NCBI GenBank assembly: GCA_037379345.1
Contig: CM074511.1
Coordinates: forward strand, 23,002,001 to 23,066,000
DNA length: 64,000 nt
Source of the DNA: Perna viridis
Lineage: Eukaryota
Reading direction: 5' to 3'
In this document: positions 723 through 55,329 of the stretch, piece by piece
Layout: every line of letters begins with the position of its first letter
Numbering within the stretch: position 1 is the first letter of the stretch
Program-made: the position numbers and the translations under genes
The notes under the pieces: model-generated
Seen by the model: only the letters and a program-made list of their open reading frames with translations
Told to the model about the DNA's origin: nothing
Database searches by the model: none

Positions 723-1121
723 TTATAACTGGCCAATTTTCTCTGTTTCCTCCAACTGGTCAGTCCAGCTTGTGCTGCTCATTTGATCATACATATCTTC
801 TAGTGGATAAACGGCCTCCACTTGGTCTGCCCAACTGATACCAACAGAGTAAGCACCAACATCTGCAAGACCTTTTTCGAGAGCGCCTTCTTTCTCTGTT
901 TGCTCTGCACGCTCGACTTGGTCTGCCCAACTAAATGTTGCATCTCCATTATTACCTTGAGCATTTAAGTTGTTCAATTCAGACTCATCGTTGCTACCAA
1001 GGCTGCCGTTCTCGGTATTAGTTTTGCCCGTTTCCAACTCCATTGCTTCTGTACAAAACTTTTCTGTCATGCTTAATCGGGTATCGAGTGTACCGTTTTC
1101 CTCCTTACGCCTCTTTTTCAT
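723..1121 (-). pseudogene. Still-open 3' end of the orphan gene's last exon: acidic low-complexity tail with three S-W-[AT]-D-Q-[VL]-E motifs
   Basis: ORF track 132 aa contains FSWADQVE, ISWADQVE and TSWTDQLE. The homologous stop (GQL*) is retained in all three copies. Confidence 0.6.
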
Positions 1122-31730: not shown

Positions 31731-32909
31731 CCTGTAAAAGTAAAATGATTTACTCAAATAAAGTAGTTATAGATAGTTTTGTTATACGGAGTACGCACAG
31801 AAGTACTGAGGATATAGAATCCAGAAAAGTTATAATACAACCGTCGTCATAAAATTAATTCCGTTCCCAATAATTCCTTCTTCTTCTAGCAGACCTGACA
31901 TTCAGCAAATTACTGGAAGACTCGTTTCGTTGGTATTTTTTGTCGAGCAGTTGATATGCACTTAAATAAAGTTTGTGTTATATGTTATTGATTTGTAAAT
32001 CCCTTCATTTGTATGACAGACGACATCTTAAGAGGGTAAATTTCTATCCAAATCTAATTATCATTACCTTTTTGTACCTATAATTAGTTCAATGGTGATA
32101 TGTCAAACGAACTAACTTTGTTCCAAAATGAGTGTATTTTTCAGTGTAAATTACAATAAAACTATATGCACGATCCTCTTATTTGTATTACTTAAGTGAA
32201 AACTACTTACTCAAATTTTAAAACTTTGTGTACTGTACCAGAATACCAAAAAGTCCAGTTTAATCAAGGTCCCTGAATTAAATATGTATATAGCTTGTTG
32301 TTGCACAAGGAAATGATGTATGTTTTAGATGTGGAAAAACAATTCAAGATGTAATTGAAATCATCAACAAAAGTTCTAAATGTACCAGTGACGGAAACAT
32401 CGTGTGTTTTATTTCCTTCCCTTTACTAAGTGCCTTTGGTCCCTTTTCAATCTTTCAAGTTTTCAGTTCCAACATTTTTCTGCTAGGCGATGATTAACTT
32501 TCTACAAAAGGTTTCCCGCCACTTCACATTTTTCAAGTTGATGGGCACCTTCTTATTTAATCAGAAACGTAAAAAGTATTCAGCCAAAGTTATTTAAATT
32601 TTCCAGCGTTTAATTAAATATTTGAAGATGTGTATCTCCCATCATGGAGATATTGTCAATTTTAACAACCAGGCAATGTTTTAACTTCTGCGACAGGTTT
32701 CCCGCCATTTTATATTTTCCAAGTTTTCTGCAGATTGCATGAAAACCTCAATTCTTATTTTTATTTCTCCATTCTCTATGCTAAAGTTAGATTTTAATAT
32801 ACTAAAGGTCGCATATTGAAAATCTAAATGTAATCATCTCGTATAGAGAAATTAAGAATCTAACACCTGCATGATTGCAAGATAGGGAAATCCCAGAATC
32901 CCAGTGTAA

Positions 32910-37673: not shown

Positions 37674-37837
37674 ACATATGTTAAAGACTTCAAATATATT
37701 GAGGGTTCTTTAGACAGGCAAAATATGCTGTCCCTTCATGTTGCAGTTCTTTTTTTTTTTTTTTTTTTTTTTAGATTCAGACAAACTTTCCCTTTCCCGT
37801 GATTCCCATTCCCATTACAAATTGTTCTTGTTTTGAT

Positions 37838-38330
37838 TATAATTCCCTTACCGACGAATTTAGGTTTGTTTGCACTCTATCCATCCGTCCGTCTGGCAAA
37901 TCATTTTACAACACTTTTTTTCATCATGCTTGCAGATATACCATTGATGTTTGGTACATTGCTATAACATGATCAACTTCGAATTTTGCTCCGCTCCGTT
38001 GATTTTTTCCTGAGTTACGACCCTTGGACTTTCGAAGTTTATAAAATAACATAGTTTTCCCGTGTTTATTTGGGGTGTTACTATTGCAGAGGAGATGTAC
38101 ATTTTTAAATATTTGGTTTATTTCTTAACCATAAAAAAATACAGATCGTGTTTGAATTGTATTCTGGTCCGTTGGTTTTTTGTTAAATTATGGTCCTTGG
38201 ATTTGGAAAATTAGTGCAAAAACTCAGTTTTCTACATTATTGCAGTCATTATTGTAGATATACAATTTAAAATATTTGGTAAATTGCTTACCCATGAAAA
38301 ATTATAACTCATGTTTGAATTGTGGTCCTA
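37838..38330 (+). mobile_element. Old HINE-like remnant with degenerate internal repeats
   Basis: CCATCCGTCCGTC microsatellite followed by about three decayed units (GCAGATATA..TTTGGTA.ATTGCT...GAATT.TGGTCC). Confidence 0.5.
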
Positions 38331-38662
38331 TAGTTTTTGCTAAGGTGTTTGGGTCCTGCATTTTATGTGTCAGTCTGTAGTTAATAGTTTCTAAGACAAT
38401 TTCGTTATCTAATTCTTAATGTGACAATGCCTCTATTTGATGATTTTTAGGGTGTTTCTATGGAATATATTTTTTGCTATTGGTCGTAGGTTTCATGAAC
38501 ATGCAGTGCAAATCATGTAAAAGAACATTGTCCGTCATGATCTATTCGTGTCTTGCTGTGGTTAGTCCGCCTGACCAATTCATAAAACTAAAATATGGAT
38601 ATTATTTGATTTAAATAAATTAATACTTGTAATGGTACAACAAAATTGCATATTACTGAAAG

Positions 38663-40758
38663 TTACGCATCATCAAAGGCGTTTCCCCACAACAACAATT
38701 TAAGCTTAGGGTTTGAGGAAGTTACAATGCGTACACGATATCTCAAATCATCGGAACCTGCAGCAGGATTTGTATATTCCCGACCCAGTCGGTTATAGCA
38801 CAATTTCATCAATGTTATAGTCGGATTACATTCGAGAACATCAAGAAGCTTAGAAAAACCGTCATTTGTGATCCCACACATGTTTAAACCTAATGTTTTA
38901 ATTGCCTTGTTCCTTTCTAGTGATGCGGCAAGTTTTGATATACCTGCATCGGCTATGAAATTTGAACTAAGATCTAAATTCAGAATGGTTTTGTTGCTTA
39001 GAATAACATCTGCTAGTAAAGCACAGCCAGATGCTGTAATTCCACAGTTTTCAAGATTTAGTTCCAAAAGAGACGTCTTGTCATTTAAATGTCTGCACAT
39101 CATTTCCATGCCATCATCACCAATAAAGTTTCTACTCATATCTAGTTCTAGCAATGATTTACTTTGCTGGACACCTTCAAAAAGAATTCCACAACCAATC
39201 CAAGTTATATTGGCACTGCGAATGCGTAATTTTGTCAAGGACTTGTTCATCTTAAGCATATTCCCGATCGCAATACATCCACTATCAGAAACTTCAAGAA
39301 AACTAAAATCTAGCTCATTTATACTTATGCTACTTTTCAAAGCATCACAAATACTTTTGCATCCTTCACTTTCTATGCCAGTGGACGACAAATTTAGGAG
39401 TTTAATTGTAGCATTTTTCTGCAAGAAACAAGAAAGCAGTATGGCCCCTTCATTCCCAACTGAATTTAAACGCAAGTCTAGAACAGATATCGTTGATTTT
39501 GGCAAGGCGGTTGATAGCGATCCAATATCAGTTCCTAACATCTGCGTTTTACCAATATGAAGTTCTAATATACATTTGTATTTTTCAAGAATTGTAGCAA
39601 GTGCTTTTGCCCTTTCTCCGCGTAATGAGTAACCAGAAATGTTAATATTTATCATAGGAAGCCCCTGATCATGACCAGCTACTTCGTCGATTAAAGTACT
39701 GTCACTAGCATTTGACATGTAAGATATCCTTGATGACCTTTTCAGCAACATTGAATCCCTGGAGTAGCGCTTATAGTCCCTGGCTCTTTCCAGTTGTACC
39801 AAAGGTCTAAGTTTACCTAGGTGACTGTTGTAGTAACCAACTTCGAATGTAATGCTTTTGTCGTCATCGGGAATACATGATGAACTATTACTTGAGATTG
39901 GAATGTTAAATATAACGCCATAAATATCCTTCATGACATCAAGTATCACAACCACATCTTTGTTTGTTTGTTTCGATTTAAGAATATCACAGAAATCCGT
40001 GAATTGTTCACTTGTTCCCTCAATTAAAGTTTGCATTAAGCTTTCACATACCAGACGTCTATCAGGGTGTCCTTTAAAAGCTTGGTAGTCAATCCCAGAG
40101 ATAACTTTATTTTGTGACAATTCATCAAGTATTAGTGTAGGATCAATGGTTTGGCAAAGTAGTTCTGAGGAGTTCTGAAGAACTAGTCGATGGCTTTCAG
40201 ATGATGTGATGTCAACAGACATCTTTCTTGACCTACCGATTGTTCGTCTCGGATTCAAATCAGGGGTGACGATTTTAATTTTTGTGGAATTGTAGGATGA
40301 CCCTAGTACTAAAGACGAATCCAACTCTGATGAAAGATTTGCGTCATCATTCTGCTTAAGTTTTGACGTTTCAATATTATTGTTTTCTCTAATGTTTGAG
40401 TTGATAGTGCTACATTCTTTCTGCACCGGCACCACGTGTGCAGTTGGAACATTACTATCACGTGGACGTGAAATCGGATATGCTTGGGACATGGCAAGGG
40501 AATTTCGCTCGGACTGTCCTACAACTGACGAACGGGGTGTACTGATGGATGATGAACGGAATAAAAAAAGTCGAGGTGGTTTAGGCGGAGGTTTTAAACT
40601 ATTCGTCCTCTTACATGCTTCGTCAGGGAAAAGCTTTCGACTAGCTTCATATTTTGCTAATTCCTCTCTGTGGAGCAGGTCCCTTTTGCCCTTATCGCCC
40701 CGACGAAGAGAAAATCTTCTCCAGAATCTCCAGGGGTGTCCGTTCTCGTCGTCGGAAT
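38663..40758 (-). CDS. CARD + ribonuclease-inhibitor-type LRR protein (NLRC3-like LRRs, no NACHT), large terminal coding exon
   Basis: The 609-aa ORF extends open a further 88 codons plus 2 nt to acceptor TTTTTTTGTAG|AT at 40758 (phase 1): DSDDENGHPWRFWRRFSL...KPPPKPPR... CARD-like helical block SHRLVLQNSSELLCQTIDPTLILDELSQNKVIS...FTDFCDIL, then about 11 LRRs with 28-residue period (e.g. LDLRLNSVGNEGA, LDMSRNFIGDDGM, LNLENCGITASGC). Confidence 0.9.
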
Positions 40759-40905
40759 CTACAAAAAAAAATCAGAGGAAAAAATAACAAAAACGTAATC
40801 AGAATAACACAAAGATAATACATATCACAGCCAGCAGTTTAGATGGAGGGTAATATAAACACATACGTAAAGATTATTAGGTTTTTAAACGAGTGCGTAG
40901 TCTTC

Positions 40906-41007
40906 GAAGATCTGTCATATCTTCCACGAGTGTGAGAAATTCCGCTACGTTCCACTCGAGAAAAGACGTAGATTTTCTCACTCGAATGGAAGATATCCCA
41001 GATCTTC
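40906..41007. repeat. Imperfect palindrome at the end of an intronic insertion (possibly Crypton-like, non-autonomous)
   Basis: GAAGATCTG..ATATCTTCCA.CGAGTG.GAGAAA...TTTCTCACTCG..TGGAAGATAT..CAGATCTTC; the ~40880-41420 segment has no counterpart in the pseudogene copy. Confidence 0.65.
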
Positions 41008-44000
41008 ACTATTCACGAGTACAAGAAACTATTTCTTTCGTTTAAAATTACTAAAACTATATGAATGAATGGCGTTGAAAAATGGAGTAAATTAATGCGC
41101 CTGTGAAAATGTGTGTCATGTCAGTTAAAAATAAATACCTTAAACTAAAATTTCCCAGTAAAATCAATTATTGTATATTTGCTAAGAATGATAAAATAGA
41201 GACAAAACGGTGTGGTTTCAAAGAAGAAAGTTTTGAAAGATTGGTTTTCTGAAATATGGTACTATAATGCACTATTTTACTTTTTTTACCTCGCTTTGAT
41301 TGGTTGGCTTTGCCAGTGAAGACAAGAACAGAACCTCTTTTGGACTGAATTATTTGTTCGGTTTATGCTGATTTTTCGGTTTTAACTTCAAAACGCATTG
41401 ACTTTATATGTAAGGACTATGTAAGGATATCTCCAGTATATCCACGCTTTACTGTATTCATTTAATATCTGTTCTTCACTTATCAATTGAAACCATTTTA
41501 TGACTACATGAAAGCAACACACAAAAGATGATGCTATAATTTATGCAGTAGCTGAGTCATGATGTAATGACAGTATGGTACTTAATTTAATTGTTGCATG
41601 CATGGAATTGATATATGGGAGAGGCACGTCAAAACGGTGCAAAAAATTAACCATCTCAAAAATGAAAGACAAGGATCGACTCATACCAAAATAACTAAAT
41701 CCGTTTTATTTTATGGCTGATTTTAAAATTACAAAAGTCATATTTATGTTATAAAACATAACATCACTTAGCATGCCCTATAATGCTAGTTGTTGCATAG
41801 CAGCAAGCTCATTATATCAGTTTACTTTGCAGCGACAGTTACACTTACCATGTTATTGTCACTATTATGGTTTGTGCGTGATCCAGTGCATTATAATACA
41901 ATTTCATTAAAACAACAACTTTAACTCTAACATAACTCAAAGTAAAATATACAAACCTCGACAATGAAAAAATGAATAGACACGGTATAAAAATCCAAGT
42001 TACAGAAACAGAGATTAAAATCGATTCGAAAAACATTAATATTGACTGATGTCATTGACGAGACGCTGATTATACACAGTCCTAGACCAAAGTGATCTTT
42101 GGGATCAATATGCAGTGTTGAATATATGAAACTTGACTGCTCAATTACCCTTATACGAAAAATTGGTCAATATACCAACTTCAAATGGTACAAAGTCGAA
42201 AATGTCAAAAGAAATCTGAAACATGGTAAGCAAATTTAAATAACAATACAACGATTGAAATAGGTTTTAGAATAGCAAGCAAAAAAAATATTTTCAAACC
42301 TTCATCGCTTTCCCAATTTCCGGACCAAGCTGCCTCCTGTCTCCGACAATTATACGAAGATCCACCAAAAAGTGAATGTTTCACATTTACCCAGACAGAA
42401 CAAAAATTCATTACGGCCTCTTAACAGTGAATAAAGTTACCAGAGAATATTTTAATTTCTCATCATATTATGCGAGGTTTGGATGAGTCACTAACAATAA
42501 TACAACAATTAAGAACCATTACTTCCATGAAATTGACGGTTATTATTCAGGAAAATGCAAGGTCGTTGAAAAGATTGCTTCAACATCGAATTTCTCGAAA
42601 TAGAATTTCCATGAATATATTTTCTGGACTGCATAGTCGTCGTTATCCACAGTATTATATAGTAAGATCTAATATCCGGTGTCAAAGACCAAGGCGTTTA
42701 ACTAAGTGAAAATTATAAGATGAGTGTTCAAAATTATGTTTTCAACAGATTGCATCGCTAAAAACTGACAAAGATCCAAGGTGTGAATTAGTTTCATTAT
42801 TTTGTAATAAACTTATCGTTATAAGATAACTCTAGGAAATTAAGTTTTCAATTATTTCCAAGCATCTGCTGACGATGCTCTCTTGTCTGTTTAACTATGA
42901 ACAAATGTATCTATGAATTTTACACTAGACAATCACAGAAGTTTATTAAATAATATTTGTTGCATCTAAGATGAAAAAGGACGATGATTAATTATGATAT
43001 TCCACCTCCAGGTGTCCGGTGTGAGATTTATTTCCAAGGAAATTGATACTAAATATATATATAAATATATGCCAGAAGACCAGAAAAGATTGATAGTGCA
43101 GACGTCAGTTTTTATGCCGGAATATGTTTGATCGTTTCAAAGAAGGTCAAGTAGCAAAGATCAAACAAAACACATATGTATTATTATTCCATCCCAAGAA
43201 ATGAAAAACCATAGTGAGCCGTCAAGTTCCGTTGTGAATGGTTACAAAAAGAGAGAAACAGAGTGAAAATAGCTGATGTAGAAAAAACAGAGATAACATT
43301 GAAGTGCAATTATATATAAGATGCATTCAACAACACATCTTTGTCAAAATTCCAGATTCTTAGTGAATTCTACATTAATGAAAACCGGGTTGCATCACAT
43401 AGTAACACAAAATAAGTGGTGATATGTCTTGTAGGAAAATTATTTCTCTAATTAGAACCATTCTGACAGTCAAAATTGATAGAGAAAATATTTACTTTAG
43501 AATCAAAACTTGGCTGTCACAATGACGACAACCCGAATTTTCTTGGTGCGATAAAGTTCAAGATTTAACAGAAATCAAAATTCCGAAAACACATTCTCTT
43601 GTTTACTTTTATTTCTTTTGGGGCTGGTTGGGGTTTACAGCCGTTTAAATCCTAAATCGAGCACGACCTTTTGCAGAGGTCTGTTGTACATCACCAATTA
43701 TTTTTCCGGACGAGCATATACATTTTAACTTAATATATCCCGCAGGTACATTTTAACTTATTTCCCGGGGAACCTTTTGAATTAATCAAAAATAAAAATC
43801 AGCAAAAGGAAATTTGTCTTGGTATATGAAATTGTGGACGTTATTTTTGCCTTTGTAGGTAGGGATGTTTTTAAGTTGTGTGAATTTTTGCCAGAAATGT
43901 GGACAGAAATGTTTTATCGAAGCAACATGAGTAAATTCTCATTTTTTTTTCACTTGAAGTTAAACGTAGATGAAAGTAGTTGCACCAATACGATGCTAAT

Positions 44001-47000
44001 TAATACAATAAAGATTTCCTCGTGATTGAGGGAAAATTGCTCACATTTTATTTTGCTTGTGATCATATGATATTTTCTCGATTTAACAACAAAACGTCAA
44101 AAGAAAACCGAAAGGATGAATATGAAATGCTTCTTTTTAAGTTAAAAGGAGTAATAAACATGGTATTTTGTCAAGACTCCAAATTACAAAGAAGTGTTCT
44201 ACCATATTTGAGTAACTTATTACTACAATAAAAGCGATATAGGCGGTATTGTTTACGGCATATATATCATCTTTCTTTTTTAATAGTTAGTTTGGAATTA
44301 AAGCCAAGAGGATTTATATTTGATATGATGTAATAATAGAACTAAGCCATCATGGCAGAGAAGTCAGGGATAAAACCAGGCTTTAAGTGTTATCATGATA
44401 TTTCCTAAGTTCATTTTACTGACTGGTCAGTCAGTAAAAGTTCTTAACCAAAATATTACAACTGCTATATTCATTAAAATGATTTTAAATTATGCCTTTG
44501 ATGGACGGAGCTCGATCATTCTTTGTTTACAGTGCACCGCCAAGTTGTCTCATGTGTGAGACTCTTCTGGGAAAGCTTGATACATTAAATTTTCTACACA
44601 GCCAATAATTTCCAAATAATGATTCAATAAATAAATATCCATCGACATATTAAAAGAAAAAAACAGTGCGTCCGCACTTGTGCAATCGTCTACTTCCGTG
44701 TCAACAATTTAGTCACTTCCGTCTGAATATTTTTTTAGCCATTCATAGTTCTGGTCTTACATTCCACATATATAGGACCTCGCTGATGCTCCGTCCATAT
44801 ACACTCTAGCAGTTCTTAGTCACTGTCATAAAGATGCTGGTACCCCGCATCTCCTGCACAGATAGTATATTCGATATTTCAATGCTTGACTCAGTGCTCA
44901 GCGCTTTTTATGCAAATCAGTGTAGTACACCGGATACAGCTTCGCAGATTTGTAATGAGTACTGTGCTGGTGCATTATGATTTCTGTTCACATCCTGTAT
45001 AGTAGAACCTATAAGTTAGCTGATTCATGGATACATTGTATATCATGAAGCAGTGATAGGTCTGCAGAGGGGATTGGGTGCCCTGGGGGTGATACACGTT
45101 GTCTATTGTCGTCATCAGTGTCATATGCGTGAGTTTATTTTTTTACGTAAGAAACAAGGTGCCCCCCCCCCCCAATTTAAATGGTTGCTTCCTAGATCGA
45201 AAAGTATTGCTCAAAAGGGGTAAAATATACACCAATCGTTTTCGAAAAATAGGTCTTAGACGAGCGATGACAGTAGTGTATGTGTGCTGAAGCCATCAAC
45301 ATAGATAGGTGATGGTATCGTAACAATGAGGATCTTCGTACATGAGAAACAATCTTAATGGATGCAACAGATAGTTCTTTACTTACACTTATGAGTTTCA
45401 CTTGTGAATTATGCATTCCTGAGACTACACATGCCTCGTCATTTGACAAATATCAGTCAATAAAAAGGAGGAATGGAGACAGATTAATCTCACATCTACC
45501 CGACTTCAAGGGTCAGAGATTGCAGGTAGGTTAGGGGTTGTTAATAGAATAAAGAAAACTTTTGAAGGTAGAATTTGTGAAAAATCAAGACTTCATGCAC
45601 AAAAAACAATATCCCAAATATAGGGGAGGGCGTATGCCGGGTCCGCTCCGGGGCCTCTATGAATCCGCGCTTCTACGCATTCAAATGTGTGTGAAATTTA
45701 AATCAAAACTTGAGAAATGTTAAGCACGGCATTACATCTGATTTATGACCGTATGTATTCAATTTATAGCTTCAGTATTGAACTGATTTGTAATTTATGA
45801 AAAGAGTCTTTCAAATGATCGATAATTTCATAAAACAGATTTAAACGATCAGATTGGAGTTTTGTTCGCGATGTCCTCTTGTAAAAAGGATCAAAGCGTG
45901 GTTAGGGACCAAACAATGCAACTTAGGCCTTGCTGGGTTATAACATGACAAGCAGTACAATTTACAATAAATTAACATGGATCGTTTTTTGTGTCTAGTT
46001 TATCCGGAAATCTAAATTTGACATGTAATAGATCTATTTTGTCAATAAGATTGACAATTATTTATTTGAAATGTCATGTAAAAAAATTGTTGTCTTACTT
46101 TAAAGGGTCTAGATCAATGTGCATTATTAGGTCTGTTAAGCAGAGCAAGCGACAGAATTGACAGATTTGTTTCGTATGAAATTCAATACAACTGACTTAC
46201 ATGTACATGACTTAGAGTTTTTTTTCTCTTCTCTATTTCGATTATTAGGGTAACATGAGTGCATGTTTTAATGTTAATAAGCCTTATTTGCCCCATCATT
46301 TCCATTGAGTATGCTTGTACCAATGCATGAGCTATCATTTGCATTGATATTGTTTATTGTTTGGTCTTCCATTCTGTTTTCTCATTCTTTTGCTGTACTC
46401 TCTCCTTTTTGAACATTTTTTTTTCATGTTTGGCATGATTTTGTGTAGTATGGACTCAGAAATTAAACAATGTAACATTTTCACCCCGCCCTTTTGTTTG
46501 TTTGTTTGTTTGTTTGTTTTTTCAATTTATTGTTTTGGTAATTCGTTTGACATGATAATATAATGCTGTTGGTGGAAAACCTTTAAAAATATTGCAGCAA
46601 TGTTCTTGAAATGTTTGTATTGCAAAAGAACATACACCTTAGTAAAGCCGAATGCGGTTGAAAAAGGGCAAAAGCTATCAATTAGGAATCGATGAAAAGT
46701 TTACAAAGACTATACTCAGCATTTTCAGTAAGCAGGACAGATCTGATCTGAATGCCAAAGAACACTGTCGGAAGATAAAGAAAGGAACGCAACAGAGACC
46801 GCACGTACACACAAGCCGATAACACAGTCATCAACTCATGGAAATAGAATTAACTTAATGTAGATGGTTGTTACTGATATGTGTCCTAGGGGAAATGACC
46901 ATCTGATGGATGGGACAAGACAGTAAATTAAGTATAATTAAATTACAAATTGGAATTACATTGGTATCGAAACGTGATATTTGCCCAATGATTACTTGTA

Positions 47001-47690
47001 GTTATTGATCCAATAGAAGCTGATTGGATGGATAGACCTCAATAAAATGGTATGCTTAGGGTTATCAAAGAGATTAGTCGTCGTATGAAACATTTGTTTA
47101 ATGGACAGTTTTACTGTTATCATTGCATTCCACCTTGTCGCATAAAATCTGATCTTTGTTGGCATAAACTAGTACTAAATATAGGGACACTAAAGCTTCT
47201 TTGGTCTAACAAGCAAGATTCCATTTTCACATTTTAGCTATCGAATGTCTGTTTTGTCCTTTTTTCTAATAACGAGTTTTAACCCCTATATGACACCTAC
47301 ACGATACATGTATATAAATCGAGTCTTATTTTGCTTGTGATTCGGATGATTACATATGAATTGCGCAGTCATTGTGACACGAAACCATACACAAAAACCA
47401 AAAGTCATTTAGATAGGAAAAGCGAAATATAAATAACGATATATATCTTGTAACGAGAAAAGAGGAGATTATAGAGCCAAATTTAAGGAAAAACAATTAA
47501 AGCTATAATCATATCATGAGAGTAAAGGGAAGTCATATCATATCCTTACTTGATTTCAAGGAGCAAATCTGATGTATAAATAGAACACAGAGACTAAAAC
47601 ATAAATAGAAAGCGGGAAGAAAGAAATAGAGTAATAAGCAACTCCGACTAAATAAAAGAAAACAAGAAAGTGTAAAACACAGCCCCTTAC

Positions 47691-47749
47691 CTATCCTTCG
47701 ATCCATTACATCCTTCACAAAATAACGGTTCTGACCATGCTCTTGATAT
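47691..47749 (-). CDS. Candidate alternative coding exon of the CARD-LRR gene (MDRRI-G|, phase 1)
   Basis: TTTTAG|ATATCAAG...ATG GAT CGA AGG ATA G|GTAAGG; the phase-1 donor joins in frame to the 40758 acceptor (MDRRIDSDDENG...). Confidence 0.45.
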
Positions 47750-50700
47750 CTAAAACTCATTAACACTTGGTACCCATCTGTCCATTTGTATGACCTGACT
47801 AATCACAGTATCAATTTCCGTGATAACCAATGATCAGACGAATCAACTGTCATATCTTAGAACAAAGAGCAACTCTAGTGATTGCCAAGAAAGCTTTGTC
47901 AAGGAAATAAAACAGTAGAAAATGCTGTGAAAATACAATATACTAAGTAGTTCTCCAGGCAATCTGGCGATATTTTCCAAGCATAAGCAAGAATGAAATA
48001 TTTCTCAAATTAATTATTTCAATTCATGTAAGTGCTTAATACAAGCCGAGAACACAAGCCAAGAGGCCCTCAATGAAAACTTCAGATATTACATATCAAG
48101 TGTAATTTTAATTAACCCTAAACCTATTCAGATTAGACTAATGAACTTTTTGAAAAATGTTGACTAAAATCAGAGCTCCTCGAAACTAAAATTTGGTACG
48201 TTTACGTCATTTAAAAATTAAATGAAAAGTGGGAAATGTAAAAAAAATCAAGGAACAAATAGTTTAACCTCAAAAAGAGTATATAGTGTCTATACGTATA
48301 TAGTACTGTGTATATGCATCACTGTCATGATGTCAACCCAGCGCAATGAAATACCTATTTGAAATGTATCCTAGCTCATTGATGGACAGCAAACAAATAA
48401 AAAAATAATGATCGAAAGCTTAAGCGATCAGAAAAGAAAGGAGAGTTCCATTACTTCACAAAATGTGTAGTCATTATGCAAAGATTTGTATAGTACATGT
48501 AGTATGCATATGGCATACCATATGTACATGTGAGTAATTGGGTAAAAACATCTATATTAGCAAAGTATGGTATCGATTTTTGCACCTGCACAGGTGAGAA
48601 AACAATGATGAAGATGAAGCTGATTACAGATATCAGTTCTCAGAATGTCTACTAGATGATTGATTACCCCAACCTACTAGCGTTTAACGTAACAATTTAA
48701 GTGAAATTCACAAAGCTGGAGCATATCAAGAGATTTATATAAAGGGGATGGGGGTTTCAATTTATCATTAATTTGCTCATATTTTTGGTCAACTTTTGCT
48801 CGAGTTTGCTCTATAATCTATCTCCGTTTCGCATAATTTCACCACCGGACTCACTACGGCAAAATATAAAGAAAAAAGTATTAAGTTTGTACACTGAAAT
48901 AGCAAATAACAGATACTATTTCAGTGTACAAATTGAAATTAAATGACGAATACAAGAAAATGTAAAAAATAACTTTCTTGGTGTTTGCATGTTCCAATGT
49001 GGAATGAAATAAGCCTGTGTGATATAGATAGTTGGCAGACAAGATAAACGAGACAAGTTTCCTTTTGGGAATGTAGAGTGATGGATATTTCAACAAGAGA
49101 TCCCAAGGGAGATCATTTTACAGATTTGTCATTGAGGTAGAAATGTTAAGTATACACGTCCATCTACGATATATGCAGCTTCTATGTGATAAGACCATAT
49201 TTTATTTGTCAAATATCCTGATAGTGTAAATGCACCCGCATGTCATATTCGCGATTTGAGTGCTAATTAAGTAATGAAGGAGAAAAATGCATTTTGAAAG
49301 TTGAAAAAATATTTGATTAGTGACAAAAACTTGTCTAAATTTACATACAATTGACCTGGGCTGTTTTTAATTATCTTTGTTAATTTTAGCTACACCTCTT
49401 ATTGGATTGCTTTAGAAATAAATATGACTTGCTGAGAGATTTAAGGTTATTAAGACAGTTGAGAAATTAATTAAAAATCCGATATACAGCTCTTTCTTTG
49501 ATTTGCATGATTTGTATAGGAATAAATATTAAGTTATAAAAATCAATTAAGATAATTTCGTGTGTCACAATGACTAGTTACTTTATTATTCACAAATGAA
49601 CGTCAAAGGACGAGCTACAGTAGATGTAAGTATCAAACATGGATGGTTTGGTAGGAAAGAAGCATATTCATGTTCGTTTAAATATCTTTACAGTTCTCAC
49701 AGGCATATTTGGTTTGTTTGATAAAGTTACGGTTTTGTCGAAAATGCAACATTTTTTTGTTCACGGTCCTTAATTGTTCCGTTCACGATCAAGCTGCATT
49801 ACTTGACATATAACACCGATCTGCTCACGATCATTTTTCTCGCTTGACAGTGTGACTTTCACTTTCAATACATAACAAAATTTACTTCCTAAAAATAAAA
49901 AAAAATGATAATGTAGTCTAAATATATGCTGTTAAGACGTAAAACGTCAGATAACAACCTTATACCGACATCTGCTTAAATATAGGTATAGTATAATTTT
50001 ATAGATTAGATCTTCATTTTCACCTGCTGATTTAATAACTGGTATACGAGGTGTTTAAGCAACAGAGAAAAAAACGTATCACTGCCACAATAACATGTTG
50101 ATGACCCGGTGATGGTCAGTGGTAGACATTGTGTTCACTTGTAATGTGAACGCGTATTGTCCTGTGAAATGCTTTTTTACCTGTTTGTCAATGATACGAC
50201 AGGCCCACAAGGGCCGGTCCAGAAATTTATTAACAGGGGTTTCGACACAAAAAATCATTTAAGGTGTTTCATGCTGTCCTTTGCTCATATGTGTTCAAAA
50301 TTTGCTCCTAATTAACCGGTTTCCCAGTAAGAGGGAGGTAACAGTTCTCGGGACCACTGGTTTATATTGATAAATTGGTATGCTTTTATTGTAAACATGG
50401 AAAGCGAGTATCAATAAACGAAAACATGTTCAACTTAGCATTAATTGTGTTGACATTGTATCAAGAAAAAAAAACGCAAATAAAAAACGTTTTATTATTT
50501 TTGGACACTGTTAGACCCATGGACATTGTGATGCTTCTTGGGCTACAGGAAGTAATGAATTTTTTAAAACCCAATTATTTTTCTAAAGAATTTGAAAGGC
50601 ATGATGAAATTATAGTTACAGCCAGATTTAACTTGTTATTCATCGAATTACATGAATTTTATGACATTTAAGTTTGACCTTGAAAAGTACAGGTTCACTG

Positions 50701-51459
50701 CTCACATCCCCTCCTAAAGCTTGCATGATATAATTTAGCATAACAAATAACTTTCAATTTCGTTATTAAATTTCAAATTAAATTGCTATGTACTGGAAAC
50801 AGACCTAAATTATATGAAGGATTTGCAGCTGTTTGTGAAACATATTTTTTTTGGAGTATAATTATCTATTTTTGCTACGTTATATTTTTTTCTCGAAAAT
50901 AATGTTCTATATTTTGAAAACAACCATGCAAGTGTCCCGGAGTATCTTGTTTTCTTTCATTCCTTCAAAGTAACCAGTTACATGAATTGATTTGAAAGAT
51001 ATGTTTGTTTTTGCCATTGTAACAATATTTTCAATTTTTTTAGACTAGTTGACTTACATAAATTGCTCATACCAAACAATGGCCCAGATAAAAAAGCATT
51101 TGTTATATTATGCATTTACATAGTACAAAGTTCTTGTTTGCCCGGGCGAATTTCCAAAAAAAAAAAAATGAATCGCCACAAAGTTAATCTAAACTTTAAA
51201 CTAGTTGTTAAGCCACACTTACTACTGGATAAATGGATAGTTTTAGTTAATGCACAACCCTCTGTTTGGTTTATTTTCAAAGTAAGAGATTTGTTTTTGA
51301 ATCAAATAACTGGCGGAAATATTTGTACACTTCAACTTCCAAATTTCAATGAAGTTAATAGTACTGTTGCAGAAAATGAGAGCTGAAAATTCAGCTAAAA
51401 TGAAATTTGAAAAATTCTATATGGCGAAAAAAAAGAACAGGCATCCACTTCATGCATGT

Positions 51460-51560
51460 ATGCCTGGCTATTGCGAACATGTTATGGTATGCAACTATCG
51501 ATCCGTCCGTCCGTCCGTCCCTTTGACGAACGATAACTTGAAACCCTTTTGGGCGATTTC
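51460..51560 (+). repeat. HINE 5'-end remnant
   Basis: (TCCG)4 microsatellite followed by ACGATAACTTGAAACCCTTTTGGGCGATT. Confidence 0.4.
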
Positions 51561-52377
51561 ATATTTTGGTAAAATGAAATGGTAATAATCTGTATAATCG
51601 TTATATAAATAGAGCGTTTCTGTATTTAATTCATAGATTTCGATTCTAGATAGTTAACATGTCACTTTTGCATCGAAAGTAGCGCTTAATGTGCGATAAA
51701 TGCGATATCGATTTCCTTCATCATAAATAAACATTATATCATCTTTAATAATACCTGTATTGGAACCACGTTTTCACAAATACCTACATTGTACAGTATA
51801 TTACGTCACTTCATATCGTTTAAGTATTCTTCAGAGAATATTCATGGCTTCGTTTTCTTATTTATATATACAAGCTTATAAATATTTTTGTAATGAAATA
51901 TGGTGCCTTCGGTATCACTTGGTACATGCAATTATATTTAGAAGACATGAAAAAAAAATGTGATATACGTGAAAGTACATAAAATACGATATAATAAAAC
52001 ATTACAATAAGCTATGTAAACATGTCCTACAATAATATATCACCATGTATCTGTGTGTACTTGTCTAACTTATAAGTTCGAAGGGATTAAGGTAAGTGTT
52101 GACCTGATGAATTGTGTCTTCTCATAATCTGAACGACAAAGTTGGTCTTTGGGAATGCAAACAAATATATATTTTTATATTTATTTGTACTAAGAAAGGG
52201 AGATTTTGTACAACAGTTACGAACGGTATATTTGGTGTTCAGAACTGTCAAAACAAGTGGTATATAGTAGTAAATTATAATACAAAACCTCGGTAAAAAC
52301 TTATTAGTACCAAAGTTTAGGTAGACCTTTTCAAATCTGACCCCTCTTAATTTTCTAAAAGCGTAAATAAGACTCAC

Positions 52378-52477
52378 CTGGACCATTCCTAACCGGCAGT
52401 GGCTCCTTTGAATAGGGTTGATTGTCTGCATCCCTTTCTGCATACCGATTGCTGGCACAACTAAATTGCCCACCCAT
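52378..52477 (-). CDS. Predicted first coding exon of the CARD-LRR gene (MGGQFSC... N-myristoylation signal)
   Basis: ATG at 52477, 33 codons + 1 nt (MGGQFSCASNRYAERDADNQPYSKEPLPVRNGP-G), strong donor CAG|GTGAGT. Phase 1 matches the 40758 acceptor, giving 2196 nt = 731 aa + stop. Candidate upstream acceptor at ~52533 and 5'UTR donor CAG|GTAAGC at ~52650. Confidence 0.68.
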
Positions 52478-55329
52478 TACATGACAGAGTCCTTCATGGC
52501 TTGTAAATATATGCAGAGTCCACGTTCAATACCTATTATATGTAATGAAAGTCTACAAATGTCCACAAATATTTCTTAATTCACTTGTACATGTTATCCT
52601 AGATGATGTAATATATTATCATTTACTTAGAAGCAGAAACATGCGCTTACCTGCATGTCCCTGCACATGTCTGCTTTTTCTGATTAACTAATGGATGCAA
52701 AGTCACCTGAGATTGTCAATAAACCAACACAGGCAATACACATCCAAGTTACAGTTAATCACTCAATCGTCACAACCCGTCATTAAAGCTCTTCCTATTG
52801 TACTAAAACATTTCCCTAATTGAGAAGGCGGATTTTTCTCTCAGTAATTGGTACAAATCTGTCCTTATTCAGTTCAGTGATGGTTTTGTAATCCAAATCT
52901 CCATTTCAAGCAGTGATCCTTGGCCCGTTATGTAGGTAGCATTTGATCGATTGCATGTTTTAAAGTTACATGACCATGCGATTATTTATTTTCCTTCATT
53001 CATAGTATTAAACACCCGAATTTGGCTAAGATTCAAACGTGTAACTTTACCACTTTGAGTTTGCTTTTATTATCGAACTGGTCACTATTAATCCCATTTC
53101 GCAGCGTCAGTGATCTGATAATAAACCTAATTTACGGTATCAATATCTGATGTGTGATACCTTGAACAGAGATGTTTATTTTCTGACAACACACTTGTCT
53201 TTTTTACCTGGACACGATCAACCATGATCCGGATATTGATATGAAATTTCATATTTGTCAATTATACGGATTTGTAAAGAAAAGTACAACGAACCTAACG
53301 TGATACATTTTCTTGTAGACAGAAAGTCGTACAGCCGTCAAATTATATCTATATTTCTATATCTGATAAGGTAAACATTGTTTCAAAAGCAAATAATAGA
53401 ACGGACTTAAACTAGAAGTTCAAACATACATTTCAAAAATGTCCCTTGTGGTATTAGGATGATATAGAAAATCTGTACAAATTCAGTTTTGAAACAAAAC
53501 TCCATTGTGGGTCGATGAAGATGTCTATTTTATTTAGCGTTGGAAGTTTACAAATTTATATGCTATATGGTTTCAATTTCTTAATACTTCGAACTACACA
53601 CTTCATTCACAAAATTTTGACACTTTCCTTAGAGATCGTGCTGCTGTCTGTGTCTCATTTTCAGCTTTCTCTGAGGCACAAATCAAAACAAACAACAACG
53701 AAAAACACAAACAGAAAACGGCACTTTTCCGGACTTTCGCACCGTGTGCCGGACGACCGAAAGTAATGTGACGTGCCACACCACCCACCCACCCACCCCC
53801 CTTTTTCGCCTTTTCAAATTTGAAAATACTGCTATAGTATTTATAGCTTATCTATAAAGGTTAATACATCCCAAGGTGAACTGAAATTTTTTTAATGAAT
53901 TACATCTCGGAAAGGAATTTTCTTTTTCCTCCACATGCGTGGTTTCTAAGGGGCTGACCCATTACTACTAGTATTATTATTATTTTTTTAAATTTCTACC
54001 CCGAAAATGATCTTGCACCAATTCACTCGGTCCTTTATTCTATTTAACCCCCCCCCCTTTTCCGCCAACATGATATCTCGCTTCGATATAATTTTCTAAT
54101 TTACTATTTGCTTGAAATATTGCAATCGTTTTTTAAATTAATAAACTTTTACGTTAGTGGTTTCTAAGTTTAAGGGTAAGTTCGGTTAACTAGGTCCTGA
54201 AAAGCAGATCCATTTCCTTAAACTTTGCTAACAATTTTTTTTTCTGACCATACATGCAAAACACGGAAATGGAAATGTGATATGAAGCGGAAATGTGTAA
54301 ATCGACAAATTGGCAAGAGAAAAAAAAACACTGTATTTCGTTGCATATTTTTTATGATTGAAACATTGGTTACAAACGCCGACATTTTTCCTATTTTACC
54401 ATGAAAAGTCGACTTTTTGACAAAATATGTAGTAAGTCGATTGACACCTCACCTAAAAACCAAGGATACAAATATCTACTGTAAAAATCCTTGTGAAAAC
54501 TAAGAGGTCCCTTATGGCTAGATTGCGAACGTTTTATTTTCTGTCGAATAAACCTAACTCGAATAATTTAGCTCCATCTATTAGTAAATTTCTCTATAAT
54601 GGAGCAAGCGGAATTTAACGACTGTTATTATTCCGGTTAAAATTAACTCGACTTAAAATAACGATCTAAACGTGATCGTTGTAAGGGGAAAAAACCGTAA
54701 GTTTTACGCAAAAATTTTGATAATTTCGAAAATTTGAGCACCGACTGAATTTAGTTTTTACAGTAGACGAACTTGGTTGGACCAGAGACCTATAAAAGAA
54801 CATTTTTCACCGACAAAGAAATCCAAATAAGTTTTTATAATATAACATGTAACAGAGTACTGCACTACAGTGTAGGGGAGCGTAACGCAACATGCATCCT
54901 GTTTAATTGTTGACCCGGTCTATTCAAACTGAAAAAAAATACTCCATCAATCGCATTGCTTTTATCATAGACTGTACAGGTCTATATATTTACTAAGAAA
55001 TTACATCTATTAATGTGGTGAAATATATAGTTGCATTTAAAATAAATTAGAACATTGAATGTTAACACTGGATACTATCTGTATTTTTTGTAATTTGTAA
55101 TAGGTCGGACTATTATTTTTCTGACTTATACAGATCTTCCACGTTATACCTATTTTGATTTTAATTTTGATTACAAAGTATTTTTGACTATTGAAAACCG
55201 CAAAAATAAGTTCTAAAATTAATATAGCGGTGTCAAATACATGCACCAATAATATTGCCCTGGGCCAAATTTTCACAAGTATAAAAATCACAGCGCACCG
55301 TCCGGTCTCGATCTCGTATATCAACAACA

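What the first reader, a model, noticed from the sequence alone, without database searches (positions are those of the whole stretch)
38663..52477. Predicted lipid-anchored, NACHT-less CARD-LRR protein hidden by an 11.6-kb intron
Seen: the 609-aa ORF is only part of a phase-1 exon starting at 40758, and a 100-nt phase-1 exon at 52477-52378 splices in frame to give 731 aa. Order: MGGQFSC N-terminus, a disordered region with RRFSL and KPPPKPPR, a CARD-like block, a ~100-aa linker with no Walker A motif, then ~11 RI-type 28-aa LRRs. Established: M-G-x-x-x-S is the N-myristoyltransferase consensus, a nearby Cys is a typical palmitoylation site, PxxPxR is a class II SH3 ligand, RRxS is a PKA site, and canonical NLRs need a NACHT between effector domain and LRR. 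Inference: a membrane-tethered sensor, adaptor or decoy that couples LRR recognition to CARD signalling with membrane clustering in place of NACHT oligomerisation. It could easily be mis-annotated as 'NLRC3-like'.
Basis: partly seen in the sequence, partly recalled or inferred. Interest (0 to 1): 0.75.

Follow-up and report, generated by a model that had tools for sequence, protein, structure and literature searches.

The report
Lipid-anchor-motif CARD–LRR gene without NACHT
This is a real, expressed mollusc gene for a protein that joins a predicted fatty-acid membrane anchor, a CARD signalling domain and a leucine-rich-repeat domain without the usual NACHT motor, and it belongs to an unstudied family conserved across molluscs and a brachiopod.

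Summary
RNA reads and transcript contigs join exon 1a (52477-52378, MGGQFSC...) directly to exon 2 (40758-38663). By arithmetic that gives a 731-codon frame. I never built or submitted the joined protein.

Exon 2 encodes these parts in order:
- a 181-residue disordered region carrying two near-invariant motifs, WKFWRxxSxRR and KPPPKPPR;
- a six-helix bundle whose fold matches are almost all CARDs;
- an 80-residue linker (beta-hairpin plus Ser-rich loop) with no P-loop;
- about 11-12 ribonuclease-inhibitor-type LRRs.

No NACHT is found in the protein, in 50 family members, in the window or in the transcripts.

- The "intron" holds an alternative coding first exon 1b (42411-42300, MNFCSVWVNVKHSLFGG...). 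It is also spliced to 40758, so only one isoform carries the myristoylation motif.
- The gene is the single intact copy of a family found in all sampled mollusc classes and in Lingula, and the MGxxxS(C) start is kept that far.
- A decayed tandem copy lies at 22054-23809.

Acylation, membrane tethering and CARD signalling remain inference. I found no paper on the family. I rate it a new variant of a known kind and moderately interesting.

The parts
52378..52477 (-). Coding first exon 1a: ATG at 52477, MGGQFSCASNRY..., 100 nt, phase 1, donor GTGAGT. It carries the N-myristoylation consensus (M-G-x-x-x-S) and Cys7.
   Evidence: Sequence. tblastn of ortholog N-termini, e.g. P0001 residues 1-28 at 68% identity, E 1e-10. 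The loose-end consensus of RNA reads at 40760 maps uniquely to 52380-52409.
52477..52497 (-). Short upstream ORF (ATG AAG GAC TCT GTC ATG TAA). Its stop overlaps the main ATG (TAATG).
   Evidence: Read directly from the sequence. Function not tested.
40759..52377 (-). Intron of isoform a (11,619 nt, GT..AG). It contains exon 1b and its upstream region.
42300..42411 (-). Alternative coding first exon 1b: MNFCSVWVNVKHSLFGGSSYNCRRQEAAWSGNWESDE, 112 nt, phase 1, donor G|GTTTGA. No Gly2, so it is not a myristoylation substrate.
   Evidence: tblastn: Mytilus edulis isoform X1 (P0002) residues 1-37, 92% identity, E 1.8e-20. Sequence. Joint 40758->42300 with GT..AG ends in 15 reads (X20) and 3 reads (X21).
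41957..42299 (-). Extension of exon 1b when the alternative donor at 41957 (GAG|GTTTGT) is used. It carries stops in the 1b frame, so it is non-productive or acts as a 5'UTR variant.
   Evidence: Joint 40758->41957 in 8 reads of X20 and 0 of X21. Read-through translation shows stops.
38663..40758 (-). Last exon (exon 2): 697 codons plus the split codon and the stop. Transcripts end near 38595, so the 3'UTR is about 68 nt.
   Evidence: RNA depth and contig ends at 38594/38596.
40697..40732 (-). Basic-aromatic motif WRFWRRFSLRRG (exon-2 residues 9-20). Family pattern W[KR]FW..[LF]S.R[RS].
   Evidence: W9, F11, W12 and R18 are >=90% conserved. Alignment columns. Mean pairwise identity 61%.
40571..40594 (-). 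KPPPKPPR motif (residues 55-62). It fits PxxPxR and [KR]xxPxxP, the SH3-ligand consensus forms (recalled).
   Evidence: P57, K59, P60, P61 and R62 are invariant in 50 sequences. Columns shown. Also present in Lingula P0087.
39905..40204 (-). CARD (residues 185-284): six helices.
   Evidence: Pfam CARD at residues 193-263, E 0.0033, 17.8 bits, below the cut-off. 11 of 50 members match at E<=0.01. AF2 domain model pLDDT 90.7. Foldseek best hit Apaf-1 CARD, TM 0.72/0.83, rmsd 1.7 A.
39668..39904 (-). Linker (residues 285-363) with no NTPase motif. It has a confident beta-hairpin at 301-318 and then a disordered Ser/Arg-rich loop at 322-363.
   Evidence: AF2 secondary structure and pLDDT. No Walker A motif. 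No Pfam hit in this stretch.
38666..39667 (-). RI-type LRR domain (residues 364-697): 10 regular 28-residue repeats plus N- and C-terminal cap units, ending in the near-invariant tail VTSSxPKLxLLLWGN.
   Evidence: LRR_6 E 1.1e-17. Profile against PDB: ribonuclease inhibitor E 7.5e-74. Foldseek: RI 3.9e-20, then NLRP LRRs. Invariant columns.
22054..23809 (-). Decayed tandem copy (pseudogene) of exon 2. It is 84-90% identical in DNA, has many stops and two deletions, and lacks the last ~127 codons.
   Evidence: tblastn. Own-genome search: 6 TGA, 1 TAG and 7 TAA inside the match. blastn.

Best explanation
SHOWN. This is an intact, transcribed, single-copy gene with two alternative coding first exons (1a and 1b) and one large last exon. 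It encodes a roughly 731-aa cytosolic-type protein. In order the protein has:
- a disordered N-terminal region with two near-invariant short motifs;
- a CARD;
- an 80-residue non-NTPase linker;
- an RI-type LRR horseshoe.
It has no NACHT. It belongs to an uncharacterised orthologous family present in bivalves, gastropods, cephalopods, a chiton and the brachiopod Lingula.

INFERRED, most likely mechanism.
1. Isoform a is N-myristoylated on Gly2 and probably S-palmitoylated on Cys7. This places it on the cytosolic face of a membrane.
2. The nearby basic-aromatic WKFWRRFSLRR segment adds electrostatic and hydrophobic membrane binding, and phosphorylation of its Ser could weaken that binding. This would be a myristoyl-electrostatic switch of the MARCKS/Src type.
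3. Isoform b lacks Gly2 and is targeted differently, or is soluble.
4. The highly conserved LRR binds a conserved partner or ligand.
5. The CARD recruits another CARD protein by homotypic contact.
6. The KPPPKPPR motif and the phospho-site-like motifs dock SH3-domain proteins and kinases.

On this reading the protein is a membrane-tethered CARD adaptor or scaffold. Local concentration at the membrane would do the work that nucleotide-driven NACHT oligomerisation does in NLRs.
For: Gene model and expression.
- Splice sites.
- Stranded RNA cover of exon 2. The 1a junction is seen in 6+8 reads and 2 contigs, and the 1b junction in 15+3 reads. The loose end maps uniquely to exon 1a.

Family.
- 62 mollusc proteins match at E from 0 to 1.5e-58, 439-886 aa long, with 34-87% identity to the window's protein.
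- Lingula P0087 was found by the full HMMER scan. Its non-LRR part aligns to the window's at E 2e-7.

Copy number. One intact copy in the 723-Mb genome plus the adjacent pseudogene.

N-terminus. 16 of 63 family proteins start MGxxx[ST], and 14 of those have Cys7. They include the chiton P0037, Patella P0038, Argonauta P0043, Lymnaea P0053 and Lingula P0087.

Motifs. P57, K59, P60, P61 and R62 are invariant; W9, F11, W12 and R18 are >=90% conserved.

CARD.
- Pfam hit in the window at E 0.0033. P0041 scores 26.2 bits, above the cut-off. Lingula scores 45.8 bits for its two copies.
- phmmer of the domain against PDB returns only two chains, both CARDs: RIG-I at E 0.058 and ARC at E 1.4.
- The AF2 domain model has pLDDT 90.7 and six helices.
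- 31 of the 37 Foldseek rows listed are natural CARD-bearing proteins, and none is a DD, DED or PYD.

No NACHT.
- No NACHT or NB-ARC hit in any of the 50 members at E<=0.01.
- No Walker A motif.
- AF2 shows only a hairpin and a disordered loop between the CARD and the LRR.
- The genome's 5 NACHT matches all lie on other contigs.

Conservation. LRR and tail are the most conserved parts.
Against: - No experiment or tool here shows acylation, membrane binding, any CARD partner or any LRR ligand.
- The window's own CARD hit is below Pfam's gathering score, and 39 of 50 members give no CARD hit at E<=0.01.
- 47 of 63 database proteins do not start with MGxxx[ST]. Several are other isoforms or truncated models, but this shows the anchor is optional.
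- In run X20 the non-myristoylatable 1b transcripts had more junction reads than 1a.
- The strict RRxS site is not conserved.
- Single copy, slow evolution and a very conserved LRR are unusual for an innate immune sensor, so an immune role is not implied.
- The ESM Atlas gave no usable hit.
Confidence: 0.55

Rival explanations
1. Conserved non-immune scaffold. The protein is a slowly evolving signalling or cytoskeletal adaptor, for example neuronal, ciliary or developmental. Its CARD is just a protein-protein module and its LRR holds a housekeeping partner. The resemblance to NLRs is only architectural.
For: - It is a single-copy ortholog kept from brachiopod to cephalopod.
- The LRR (57%) and C-tail (76%) are more conserved than the CARD (41%).
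- RI-type LRR matches include axonemal proteins (LRRC34, DRC5/TCTE1) and RanGAP as well as NLRs.
- The N-terminal region is dense in conserved kinase and SH3-type motifs typical of scaffolds.
- The neighbouring genes are rhodopsin-type GPCRs, not immune genes.
Against: By recalled general knowledge, CARDs in animals act almost only in apoptosis, inflammation and NF-kB signalling. The closest LRR matches after RI itself are NLRP and NOD2 LRRs. No expression or tissue data were examined that would point to a non-immune tissue.
Confidence: 0.25
2. Decoy or negative regulator. Lacking an oligomerisation motor, the protein sequesters a CARD partner or an LRR ligand at the membrane and so dampens signalling. 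It would act like vertebrate CARD-only proteins, or like inhibitory NLRs such as NLRC3 and NLRX1.
For: The architecture has an interaction domain at each end and no NTPase. The linker is short. Alternative first exons could tune where the sequestration happens.
Against: There is no functional evidence either way. The CARD-only decoys recalled from vertebrates are young, lineage-specific duplicates, whereas this family is shared by two phyla and single-copy.
Confidence: 0.15
3. Artefact of the gene model. It is really a canonical CARD-NACHT-LRR gene whose NACHT exon was missed, or exon 1a belongs to another gene.
For: The interval between exon 1a and exon 2 is long (11.6 kb), and some databases name orthologs 'NACHT, LRR and PYD domains-containing'.
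Against: - RNA reads and two transcript contigs (2193 and 2991 nt) pass from exon 2 straight into exon 1a sequence.
- On the minus strand the interval holds only one other ORF of 80 aa or more (85 aa).
- No NACHT match lies on this contig.
- Orthologs with the same N-terminus are 727-829 aa long and carry no NACHT.
Confidence: 0.02

Closest known systems
NLRC-type NOD-like receptors (NOD1, NOD2, NLRC4, NLRC3)
   Same: An N-terminal CARD followed by C-terminal RI-type LRRs. NOD2 and NLRP LRRs are among the best structural and profile matches, and NOD1 and NLRC4 CARDs are among the fold matches. NOD1 and NOD2 also need lipidation (S-palmitoylation) for membrane recruitment; this is recalled and was not checked here.
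   Different: No NACHT/NOD NTPase, no winged-helix or helical domains and no Walker A motif. It has a 181-residue disordered N-terminal region with a myristoylation motif ahead of the CARD. It is single-copy and slowly evolving.
MAVS (membrane-anchored CARD adaptor)
   Same: A CARD plus a proline-rich region plus a membrane anchor, working as a platform for CARD-CARD signalling. RIG-I CARD2 is the best sequence match in PDB, though not significant (E 0.058). The description of MAVS architecture is recalled.
   Different: The predicted anchor is N-terminal acylation, not a C-terminal transmembrane helix. The domain order differs. An LRR domain is present. No sequence homology to MAVS was shown.
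Ribonuclease inhibitor (RNH1) and other RI-like LRR proteins
   Same: 28/29-residue LRR_6 repeats. RI is the best match by profile (E 7.5e-74) and by fold (E 3.9e-20).
   Different: RI has no CARD, no N-terminal disordered region and no lipidation motif.
Apaf-1 CARD, the closest solved fold for the helical domain
   Same: A six-helix CARD bundle: TM 0.72 (query) / 0.83 (target), rmsd 1.7 A over 88 columns.
   Different: Only 16% identity and Foldseek E 0.048. Apaf-1 continues into NB-ARC and WD40 domains, not LRRs.
Dually acylated signalling proteins (Src-family kinases, G-alpha i/o) and MARCKS
   Same: An MGxxxS start with a nearby Cys, and a basic-aromatic Ser-containing segment close by. 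This comparison is recalled, not tested.
   Different: No kinase or GTPase domain. The Cys is at position 7 rather than 3. Acylation was not demonstrated.

Membership tests
NLR (NOD-like receptor: effector domain - NACHT - LRR) | Central NACHT/NOD STAND NTPase with Walker A/B motifs | tested here: not met
   No NACHT or NB-ARC hit in the window protein at E<=1 or in any of 50 family members at E<=0.01. No [AG]xxxxGK[ST] motif. AF2 shows only a beta-hairpin and a disordered loop between CARD and LRR. The genome's 5 NACHT matches are on other contigs.
NLR (NOD-like receptor: effector domain - NACHT - LRR) | C-terminal RI-type leucine-rich repeats | tested here: met
   LRR_6 E 1.1e-17. RI and NLRP LRRs are the top matches.
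NLR (NOD-like receptor: effector domain - NACHT - LRR) | N-terminal death-fold effector domain | tested here: met
   CARD, see the rows below. It sits after a 181-residue disordered region, not at the very N-terminus.
CARD (Pfam PF00619, death-fold superfamily) | Sequence match to the CARD profile at the curated threshold | tested here: inconclusive
   The window scores 17.8 bits against a cut-off of 23.9, E 0.0033. 11 of 50 members match at E<=0.01, best 1.2e-6. Ortholog P0041 scores 26.2 bits, above the cut-off, and Lingula P0087 scores 45.8 bits summed over two copies. The window's segment aligns to the Lingula CARD segment at E 2e-7.
CARD (Pfam PF00619, death-fold superfamily) | Six-helix antiparallel bundle of CARD type | tested here: met
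   The AF2 domain model has pLDDT 90.7, pTM 0.83 and six helices. 31 of the 37 listed Foldseek rows are natural CARD-bearing proteins, best TM 0.72/0.83. All E-values are >=0.048. This is a predicted model, not a solved structure.
CARD (Pfam PF00619, death-fold superfamily) | Homotypic CARD-CARD binding or filament formation | not testable with these tools
   Needs binding assays or co-structure prediction with candidate partners.
N-myristoylated (and palmitoylated) proteins | Met-Gly start with a small residue at position 6 (M-G-x-x-x-S/T; consensus recalled) and a nearby Cys | tested here: met
   MGGQFSC in the window. 16 of 63 family proteins start MGxxx[ST], 14 of them with Cys7.
N-myristoylated (and palmitoylated) proteins | Actual covalent acylation and membrane association | not testable with these tools
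   Needs metabolic labelling, mass spectrometry or localisation of G2A and C7A mutants.
SH3-ligand motif carriers | PxxPx[RK] or [RK]xxPxxP core (consensus recalled) | tested here: met
   KPPPKPPR, with P57, K59, P60, P61 and R62 invariant in 50 sequences. Binding was not tested.

The most novel reading that the evidence does not exclude
This would be an ancient lophotrochozoan LRR-to-CARD signalling module that needs no NTPase. Dual acylation, together with a phospho-regulated basic-aromatic patch, would concentrate the protein on a membrane. There, ligand binding by the LRR would free or cluster the CARD to nucleate a CARD filament. The choice between first exons (myristoylatable 1a or non-myristoylatable 1b) would be the switch that decides whether the sensor is armed at the membrane. 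That would be a second, NACHT-independent route from LRR recognition to death-fold signalling in animals, in phyla where papers report few canonical NLRs (passages seen in PMC3308963 and PMC9334734).
Probability: 0.2. Interest if true: 0.8.

Novelty: new variant of a known kind. Interest (0 to 1): 0.55.

Why it matters
Reports on molluscs describe few or no canonical NLRs. A Mytilus edulis transcriptome study found no NACHT domain (PMC3308963, passages seen). An Aplysia survey found one NACHT-LRR protein (PMC9334734, passages seen). A 2024 survey, by contrast, lists NLRC genes for Crassostrea and Lingula (PMC11508797, passages seen).

This single-copy CARD-LRR protein is conserved across at least two phyla and carries a conserved lipid-anchor motif. 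It is a concrete, testable candidate for how LRR recognition could be coupled to CARD signalling without a NACHT. If the non-immune reading is right, it is instead an example of a CARD used outside immunity.

It also matters for annotation. Orthologs are currently labelled 'uncharacterized', 'NLRC3-like' or even 'NACHT, LRR and PYD domains-containing protein 5'. The last two labels are not supported by the domain content found here.

Tried and rejected
- Missed NACHT exon. Rejected on the evidence.
- Search for relatives outside molluscs.
  - The word-indexed search with the exon-2 protein and with the 50-sequence profile returned only molluscs plus LRR-only proteins.
  - The full HMMER scan with the whole-length profile gave 77,045 proteins at E<=0.001. 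Its top 150 were swamped by giant multi-LRR proteins. The only new members were Lingula P0087, a scrambled Dreissena model (P0086) and two fragments (P0191, P0195). In hindsight a profile of the non-LRR part would have been the better use of the single job.
  - A word search with the first copy of the Lingula protein, residues 1-430, found nothing.
  - Absence from annelids, nemerteans, deuterostomes and other groups is therefore NOT shown.
- ESM Atlas with residues 183-370: no usable hit.
- phmmer of the CARD segment against PDB: only two weak hits, both CARDs.
- Close paralogs of the CARD or LRR in the own genome that would link the gene to a resident NLR: none. The best foreign LRR match was E 1.9e-14 at 39% identity and lay at none of the five NACHT places. 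The best foreign CARD match was E 0.049.
- Literature.
  - 'CARD-LRR': 0 papers.
  - Six ortholog LOC numbers: 0 papers.
  - Two broader searches and passages of three papers did not mention this family.
  - One search was badly framed (min_terms 1) and useless.
  - 'Not in print' therefore rests only.
- Earlier scan notes: one unrelated note on this window and none by words.
- The 5' leader upstream of exon 1a could not be mapped.

Full report
WHAT IS THERE. On the minus strand an ATG at 52477 opens a 100-nt coding exon (MGGQFSCASNRYAERDADNQPYSKEPLPVRNGP, then one base). It ends at a GTGAGT donor at 52378. A pyrimidine-rich tract and AG precede 40758. From there the frame stays open for 697 codons to the stop at 38665-38663, and the 609-aa ORF is its ATG-delimited part. 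Every search used exon 2 alone (window:38666-40756:-) or parts of it.

RNA EVIDENCE. I laid two raw stranded RNA-seq runs (X20, X21) and two runs kept as contigs (X1, X2) on 37800-43799.
- Exon 2 is covered from about 38595 to 40758, on one strand only. Mean depth is 4-26 in the raw runs and 57 and 38 in the contig runs. The flanks have depth 0 to about 5.
- Reads that reach 40760 continue with letters that are not adjacent in the genome: 6 reads in X20, 8 in X21, and one contig each in X1 and X2.
- Their 30-nt consensus occurs exactly once in the window, at 52380-52409, and in 0 of 100 shuffles. That is the end of exon 1a. The two-base offset is the CT shared by the intron end and the exon end.
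- The contigs (2193 and 2991 nt) run from the 3' end of exon 2 straight into exon 1a, so no exon lies between them.
- The transcripts end near 38595, about 68 nt after the stop.

A SECOND FIRST EXON. I ran tblastn of the first 70 residues of the 63 homologs against the window.
- Besides exon 1a, it found a match at 42411-42301 to the N-terminus of Mytilus edulis isoform X1 (92% identity, E 1.8e-20).
- This exon 1b (ATG 42411, MNFCSVWVNVKHSLFGGSSYNCRRQEAAWSGNWESDE, 112 nt, phase 1) is spliced to the same acceptor. The joint 40758->42300 has GT..AG ends and is seen in 15 reads in X20 and 3 in X21.
- A further joint 40758->41957 (8 reads, X20 only) uses a downstream donor. It leaves stops in the 1b frame, so that form is not productive from the 1b ATG.
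- The '11.6-kb intron' therefore holds an alternative promoter and first exon. The locus makes at least two protein isoforms, and only one of them begins Met-Gly.
- Junction-read counts for 1a against 1b were 6 against 15+8 in X20 and 8 against 3 in X21. Loose ends and joints are counted by different rules, so these are rough.

THE PROTEIN.
- Pfam finds LRR_6 (E 1.1e-17) and a sub-threshold CARD hit at residues 193-263 (E 0.0033, 17.8 bits; cut-off 23.9).
- An AF2 model of the exon-2 protein was made with a 50-sequence family alignment (mean pLDDT 74, pTM 0.68). It shows:
  - residues 1-181 disordered;
  - six helices at 185-284, pLDDT above 90;
  - a confident beta-hairpin at 301-318;
  - a disordered Ser/Arg-rich loop at 322-363;
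  - a horseshoe with beta-strands every 28 residues from 396 to 649, plus cap strands at 367-374 and 686-688.
- The LRR profile matches ribonuclease inhibitor best (E 7.5e-74), followed by NLRP14, NLRP5, NLRP3, NOD2 and axonemal LRR proteins. Foldseek agrees (RI 3.9e-20).
- There is no Walker A motif.
- There is no NACHT or NB-ARC hit in any of the 50 family members.
- The genome's five NACHT matches all lie on other contigs.

IS THE HELICAL BLOCK A CARD? The evidence agrees, but each single line is modest.
- 11 of 50 family members hit Pfam CARD at E<=0.01 (best 1.2e-6), and 39 do not.
- One ortholog (P0041) passes the curated cut-off at 26.2 bits. The Lingula protein scores 45.8 bits over its two copies. 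The window's segment aligns to that Lingula segment at E 2e-7 and 21% identity.
- phmmer of the domain against PDB returns only two chains, both CARDs and both insignificant: RIG-I at 0.058 and ARC at 1.4.
- The domain alone folds with pLDDT 90.7 and pTM 0.83 into six helices.
- Foldseek against PDB gives no match at E<=0.001. Even so, 31 of the 37 rows listed are natural CARD-bearing proteins: Apaf-1, CARD9, NLRC4, RIG-I, NOD1, Bcl10, CARD8, caspase-1, ARC, RAIDD, RIP2, CED-4 and a fish NLRP1-like protein.
- The best is Apaf-1 CARD, at TM 0.72 (query) and 0.83 (target) and rmsd 1.7 A over 88 columns. Three further rows are designed proteins, two of them built on the Apaf-1 CARD template. None is a death, DED or pyrin domain.
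- The two VIA-align libraries were unavailable.
- I accept CARD fold and homology. The window protein itself does not meet Pfam's threshold.

THE FAMILY.
- The word-indexed search found 62 clear homologs at E from 0 to 1.5e-58, 439-886 aa long and 34-87% identical, plus one LRR-only hit.
- Named sources place them in bivalves (Mytilus, Mizuhopecten, Pecten, Pinctada, Crassostrea, Ostrea, Mercenaria, Mactra, Dreissena), gastropods (Haliotis, Patella, Littorina, Nucella, Biomphalaria, Lymnaea, Arion, Elysia and others), cephalopods (Octopus, Argonauta) and a chiton (Liolophura).
- Nearly all are labelled 'uncharacterized' or 'hypothetical'. A few are labelled 'CARD domain-containing protein', 'LRR and PYD domains-containing 2-like', 'NACHT, LRR and PYD domains-containing protein 5' or 'NLRC3-like'.
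- The closest named ortholog is from Mytilus edulis (80%), so the window comes from a related bivalve. That is an inference.
- The exhaustive HMMER scan with the full-length profile was swamped by giant LRR proteins. It did reveal one member outside Mollusca: a 1539-aa model from the brachiopod Lingula anatina, made of two near-identical tandem copies.
- Each Lingula copy has PPPKPPR, a CARD, the hairpin segment, the LRRs and the ...LKLLLWGN tail. The model begins MGDTLSSC.
- In the window's own 723-Mb genome there is one intact copy and one adjacent pseudogene.

CONSERVED FEATURES OF THE N-TERMINAL REGION.
- 16 of 63 family proteins start MGxxx[ST], and 14 of those have Cys at position 7. They come from mytilids, pectinids, heterodont bivalves, Patella, Lymnaea, Argonauta, the chiton (Ser6 but Arg7) and Lingula (Cys8).
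- Of the other 47, some carry the exon-1b type start (M..CS...V[KE]R.LF/C; 8 by my pattern plus about 5 more by eye). Others have different first exons or are truncated or extended models; for example P0008 has the MGGTFSC preceded by 15 residues.
- Because the database shows one representative per 90% cluster, absence of the MG form in a species means little.
- In exon 2, P57, K59, P60, P61 and R62 (KPPPKPPR) are invariant in 50 sequences, and W9, F11, W12 and R18 are at least 90% conserved.
A basic residue at -3 or -2 is usual, but oysters lack the Ser.
- By region, mean pairwise identity is 36% for the disordered part (61% and 66% in the two motifs), 41% for the CARD, 47% for the hairpin, 57% for the LRR and 76% for the C-terminal tail.

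HOW IT MOST LIKELY WORKS.
- Shown: the architecture, the expression, the isoforms and the conservation.
- Inferred from recalled general knowledge:
  - M-G-x-x-x-S/T is the N-myristoyltransferase consensus.
  - A Cys near a myristoylated Gly is commonly palmitoylated.
  - Basic-aromatic segments next to a myristate bind acidic membranes, and phosphorylation of a Ser within them releases them (the MARCKS/Src principle).
  - PxxPxR binds SH3 domains.
  - CARDs signal by homotypic assembly.
- Put together, isoform a is most likely a membrane-tethered CARD adaptor whose very conserved LRR holds a conserved partner or ligand. Isoform b would be targeted differently. Its conserved N-terminal Cys in a hydrophobic context could be a palmitoylation site, which is pure speculation.
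- Whether it activates, inhibits or has nothing to do with immunity cannot be decided here. Single copy, slow evolution and the conserved LRR argue against a diversifying pathogen receptor and keep a non-immune scaffold reading alive at about one in four.

COMPARISON WITH WHAT IS KNOWN.
- It works like an NLRC-type receptor with the motor removed, or like a lipid-anchored counterpart of MAVS. It is not a member of the NLR family, because the defining NACHT was tested and is absent.
- I found no paper on the family:
  - 'CARD-LRR' returned 0 papers.
  - Six ortholog LOC identifiers returned 0 papers.
  - Two broader searches listed nothing on it.
  - The passages I read in PMC3308963, PMC9334734 and PMC11508797 deal with NACHT-bearing NLRs or their absence.
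- Supplementary tables were closed and may list these genes.
- The gene models already exist in public annotation, so the novelty lies in recognising the family and its features, not in a new sequence.

VERDICT. The finding needs the correction that an alternative, non-myristoylatable first exon sits inside the 'intron'. I rate it a new variant of a known kind, with interest 0.55.

Noticed in passing
window 16723-18495 and 30133-31865 (ORFs 17303-18358 and 30684-31757, minus strand): Two intron-less rhodopsin-type GPCR ORFs of 351 and 357 aa (Pfam 7tm_1, E 1.2e-29 and 3.4e-27). They are 86% identical in DNA. Together with the CARD-LRR exon and its pseudogene they mark a tandem segmental duplication of a [GPCR + CARD-LRR] unit.
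   Followed up: partly
window 22054-23809, minus strand: Pseudogene copy of CARD-LRR exon 2. It is 84-90% identical in DNA and 69-77% in protein. It has 14 stops in the N-terminal 399-codon match, a 20-residue deletion inside the CARD and a 10-residue deletion in the first LRR, and it lacks the last ~127 codons.
   Followed up: partly
window 52477-52497, minus strand: A 6-codon upstream ORF whose TAA stop overlaps the main ATG of exon 1a (TAATG). This arrangement could allow termination-reinitiation.
   Followed up: no
window 52534-52660, minus strand: Upstream of exon 1a there is a donor-like CAG|GTAAGC near 52650 and acceptor-like tracts (ttgtAG, ataatAG) near 52553 and 52534. The X2 contig carries 824 nt beyond the exon 2 junction. 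A non-coding leader exon upstream of 1a is therefore likely but was not mapped.
   Followed up: no
window 41957-42299, minus strand: An alternative donor at 41957 is joined to the 40758 acceptor in 8 reads of one RNA run only. It yields a transcript with stops in the exon-1b frame.
   Followed up: partly
P0087 (Lingula anatina XP_013395180.1) and P0086 (Dreissena polymorpha XP_052212131.1): The public model of the Lingula ortholog fuses two near-identical tandem copies into one 1539-aa protein. A Dreissena 'NLRC3-like' model of 640 aa is a scrambled duplicate of pieces of the same gene. Both look like assembly or annotation artefacts, or recent tandem duplications.
   Followed up: no
window 38987-40745: The two RNA runs carry different sets of single-base variants in exon 2 at roughly half of the reads. 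X20 has, for example, 40148, 40306, 40426, 40595-40745; X21 has 39379 and 40238. This fits heterozygous alleles in different individuals.
   Followed up: no
window 723-1121: An earlier scan note (s1-755905) on this window reports a triplicated orphan gene with SWADQVE motifs. In one search, chance-level tblastn rows also touched 816-1040. It is unrelated to this finding.
   Followed up: no
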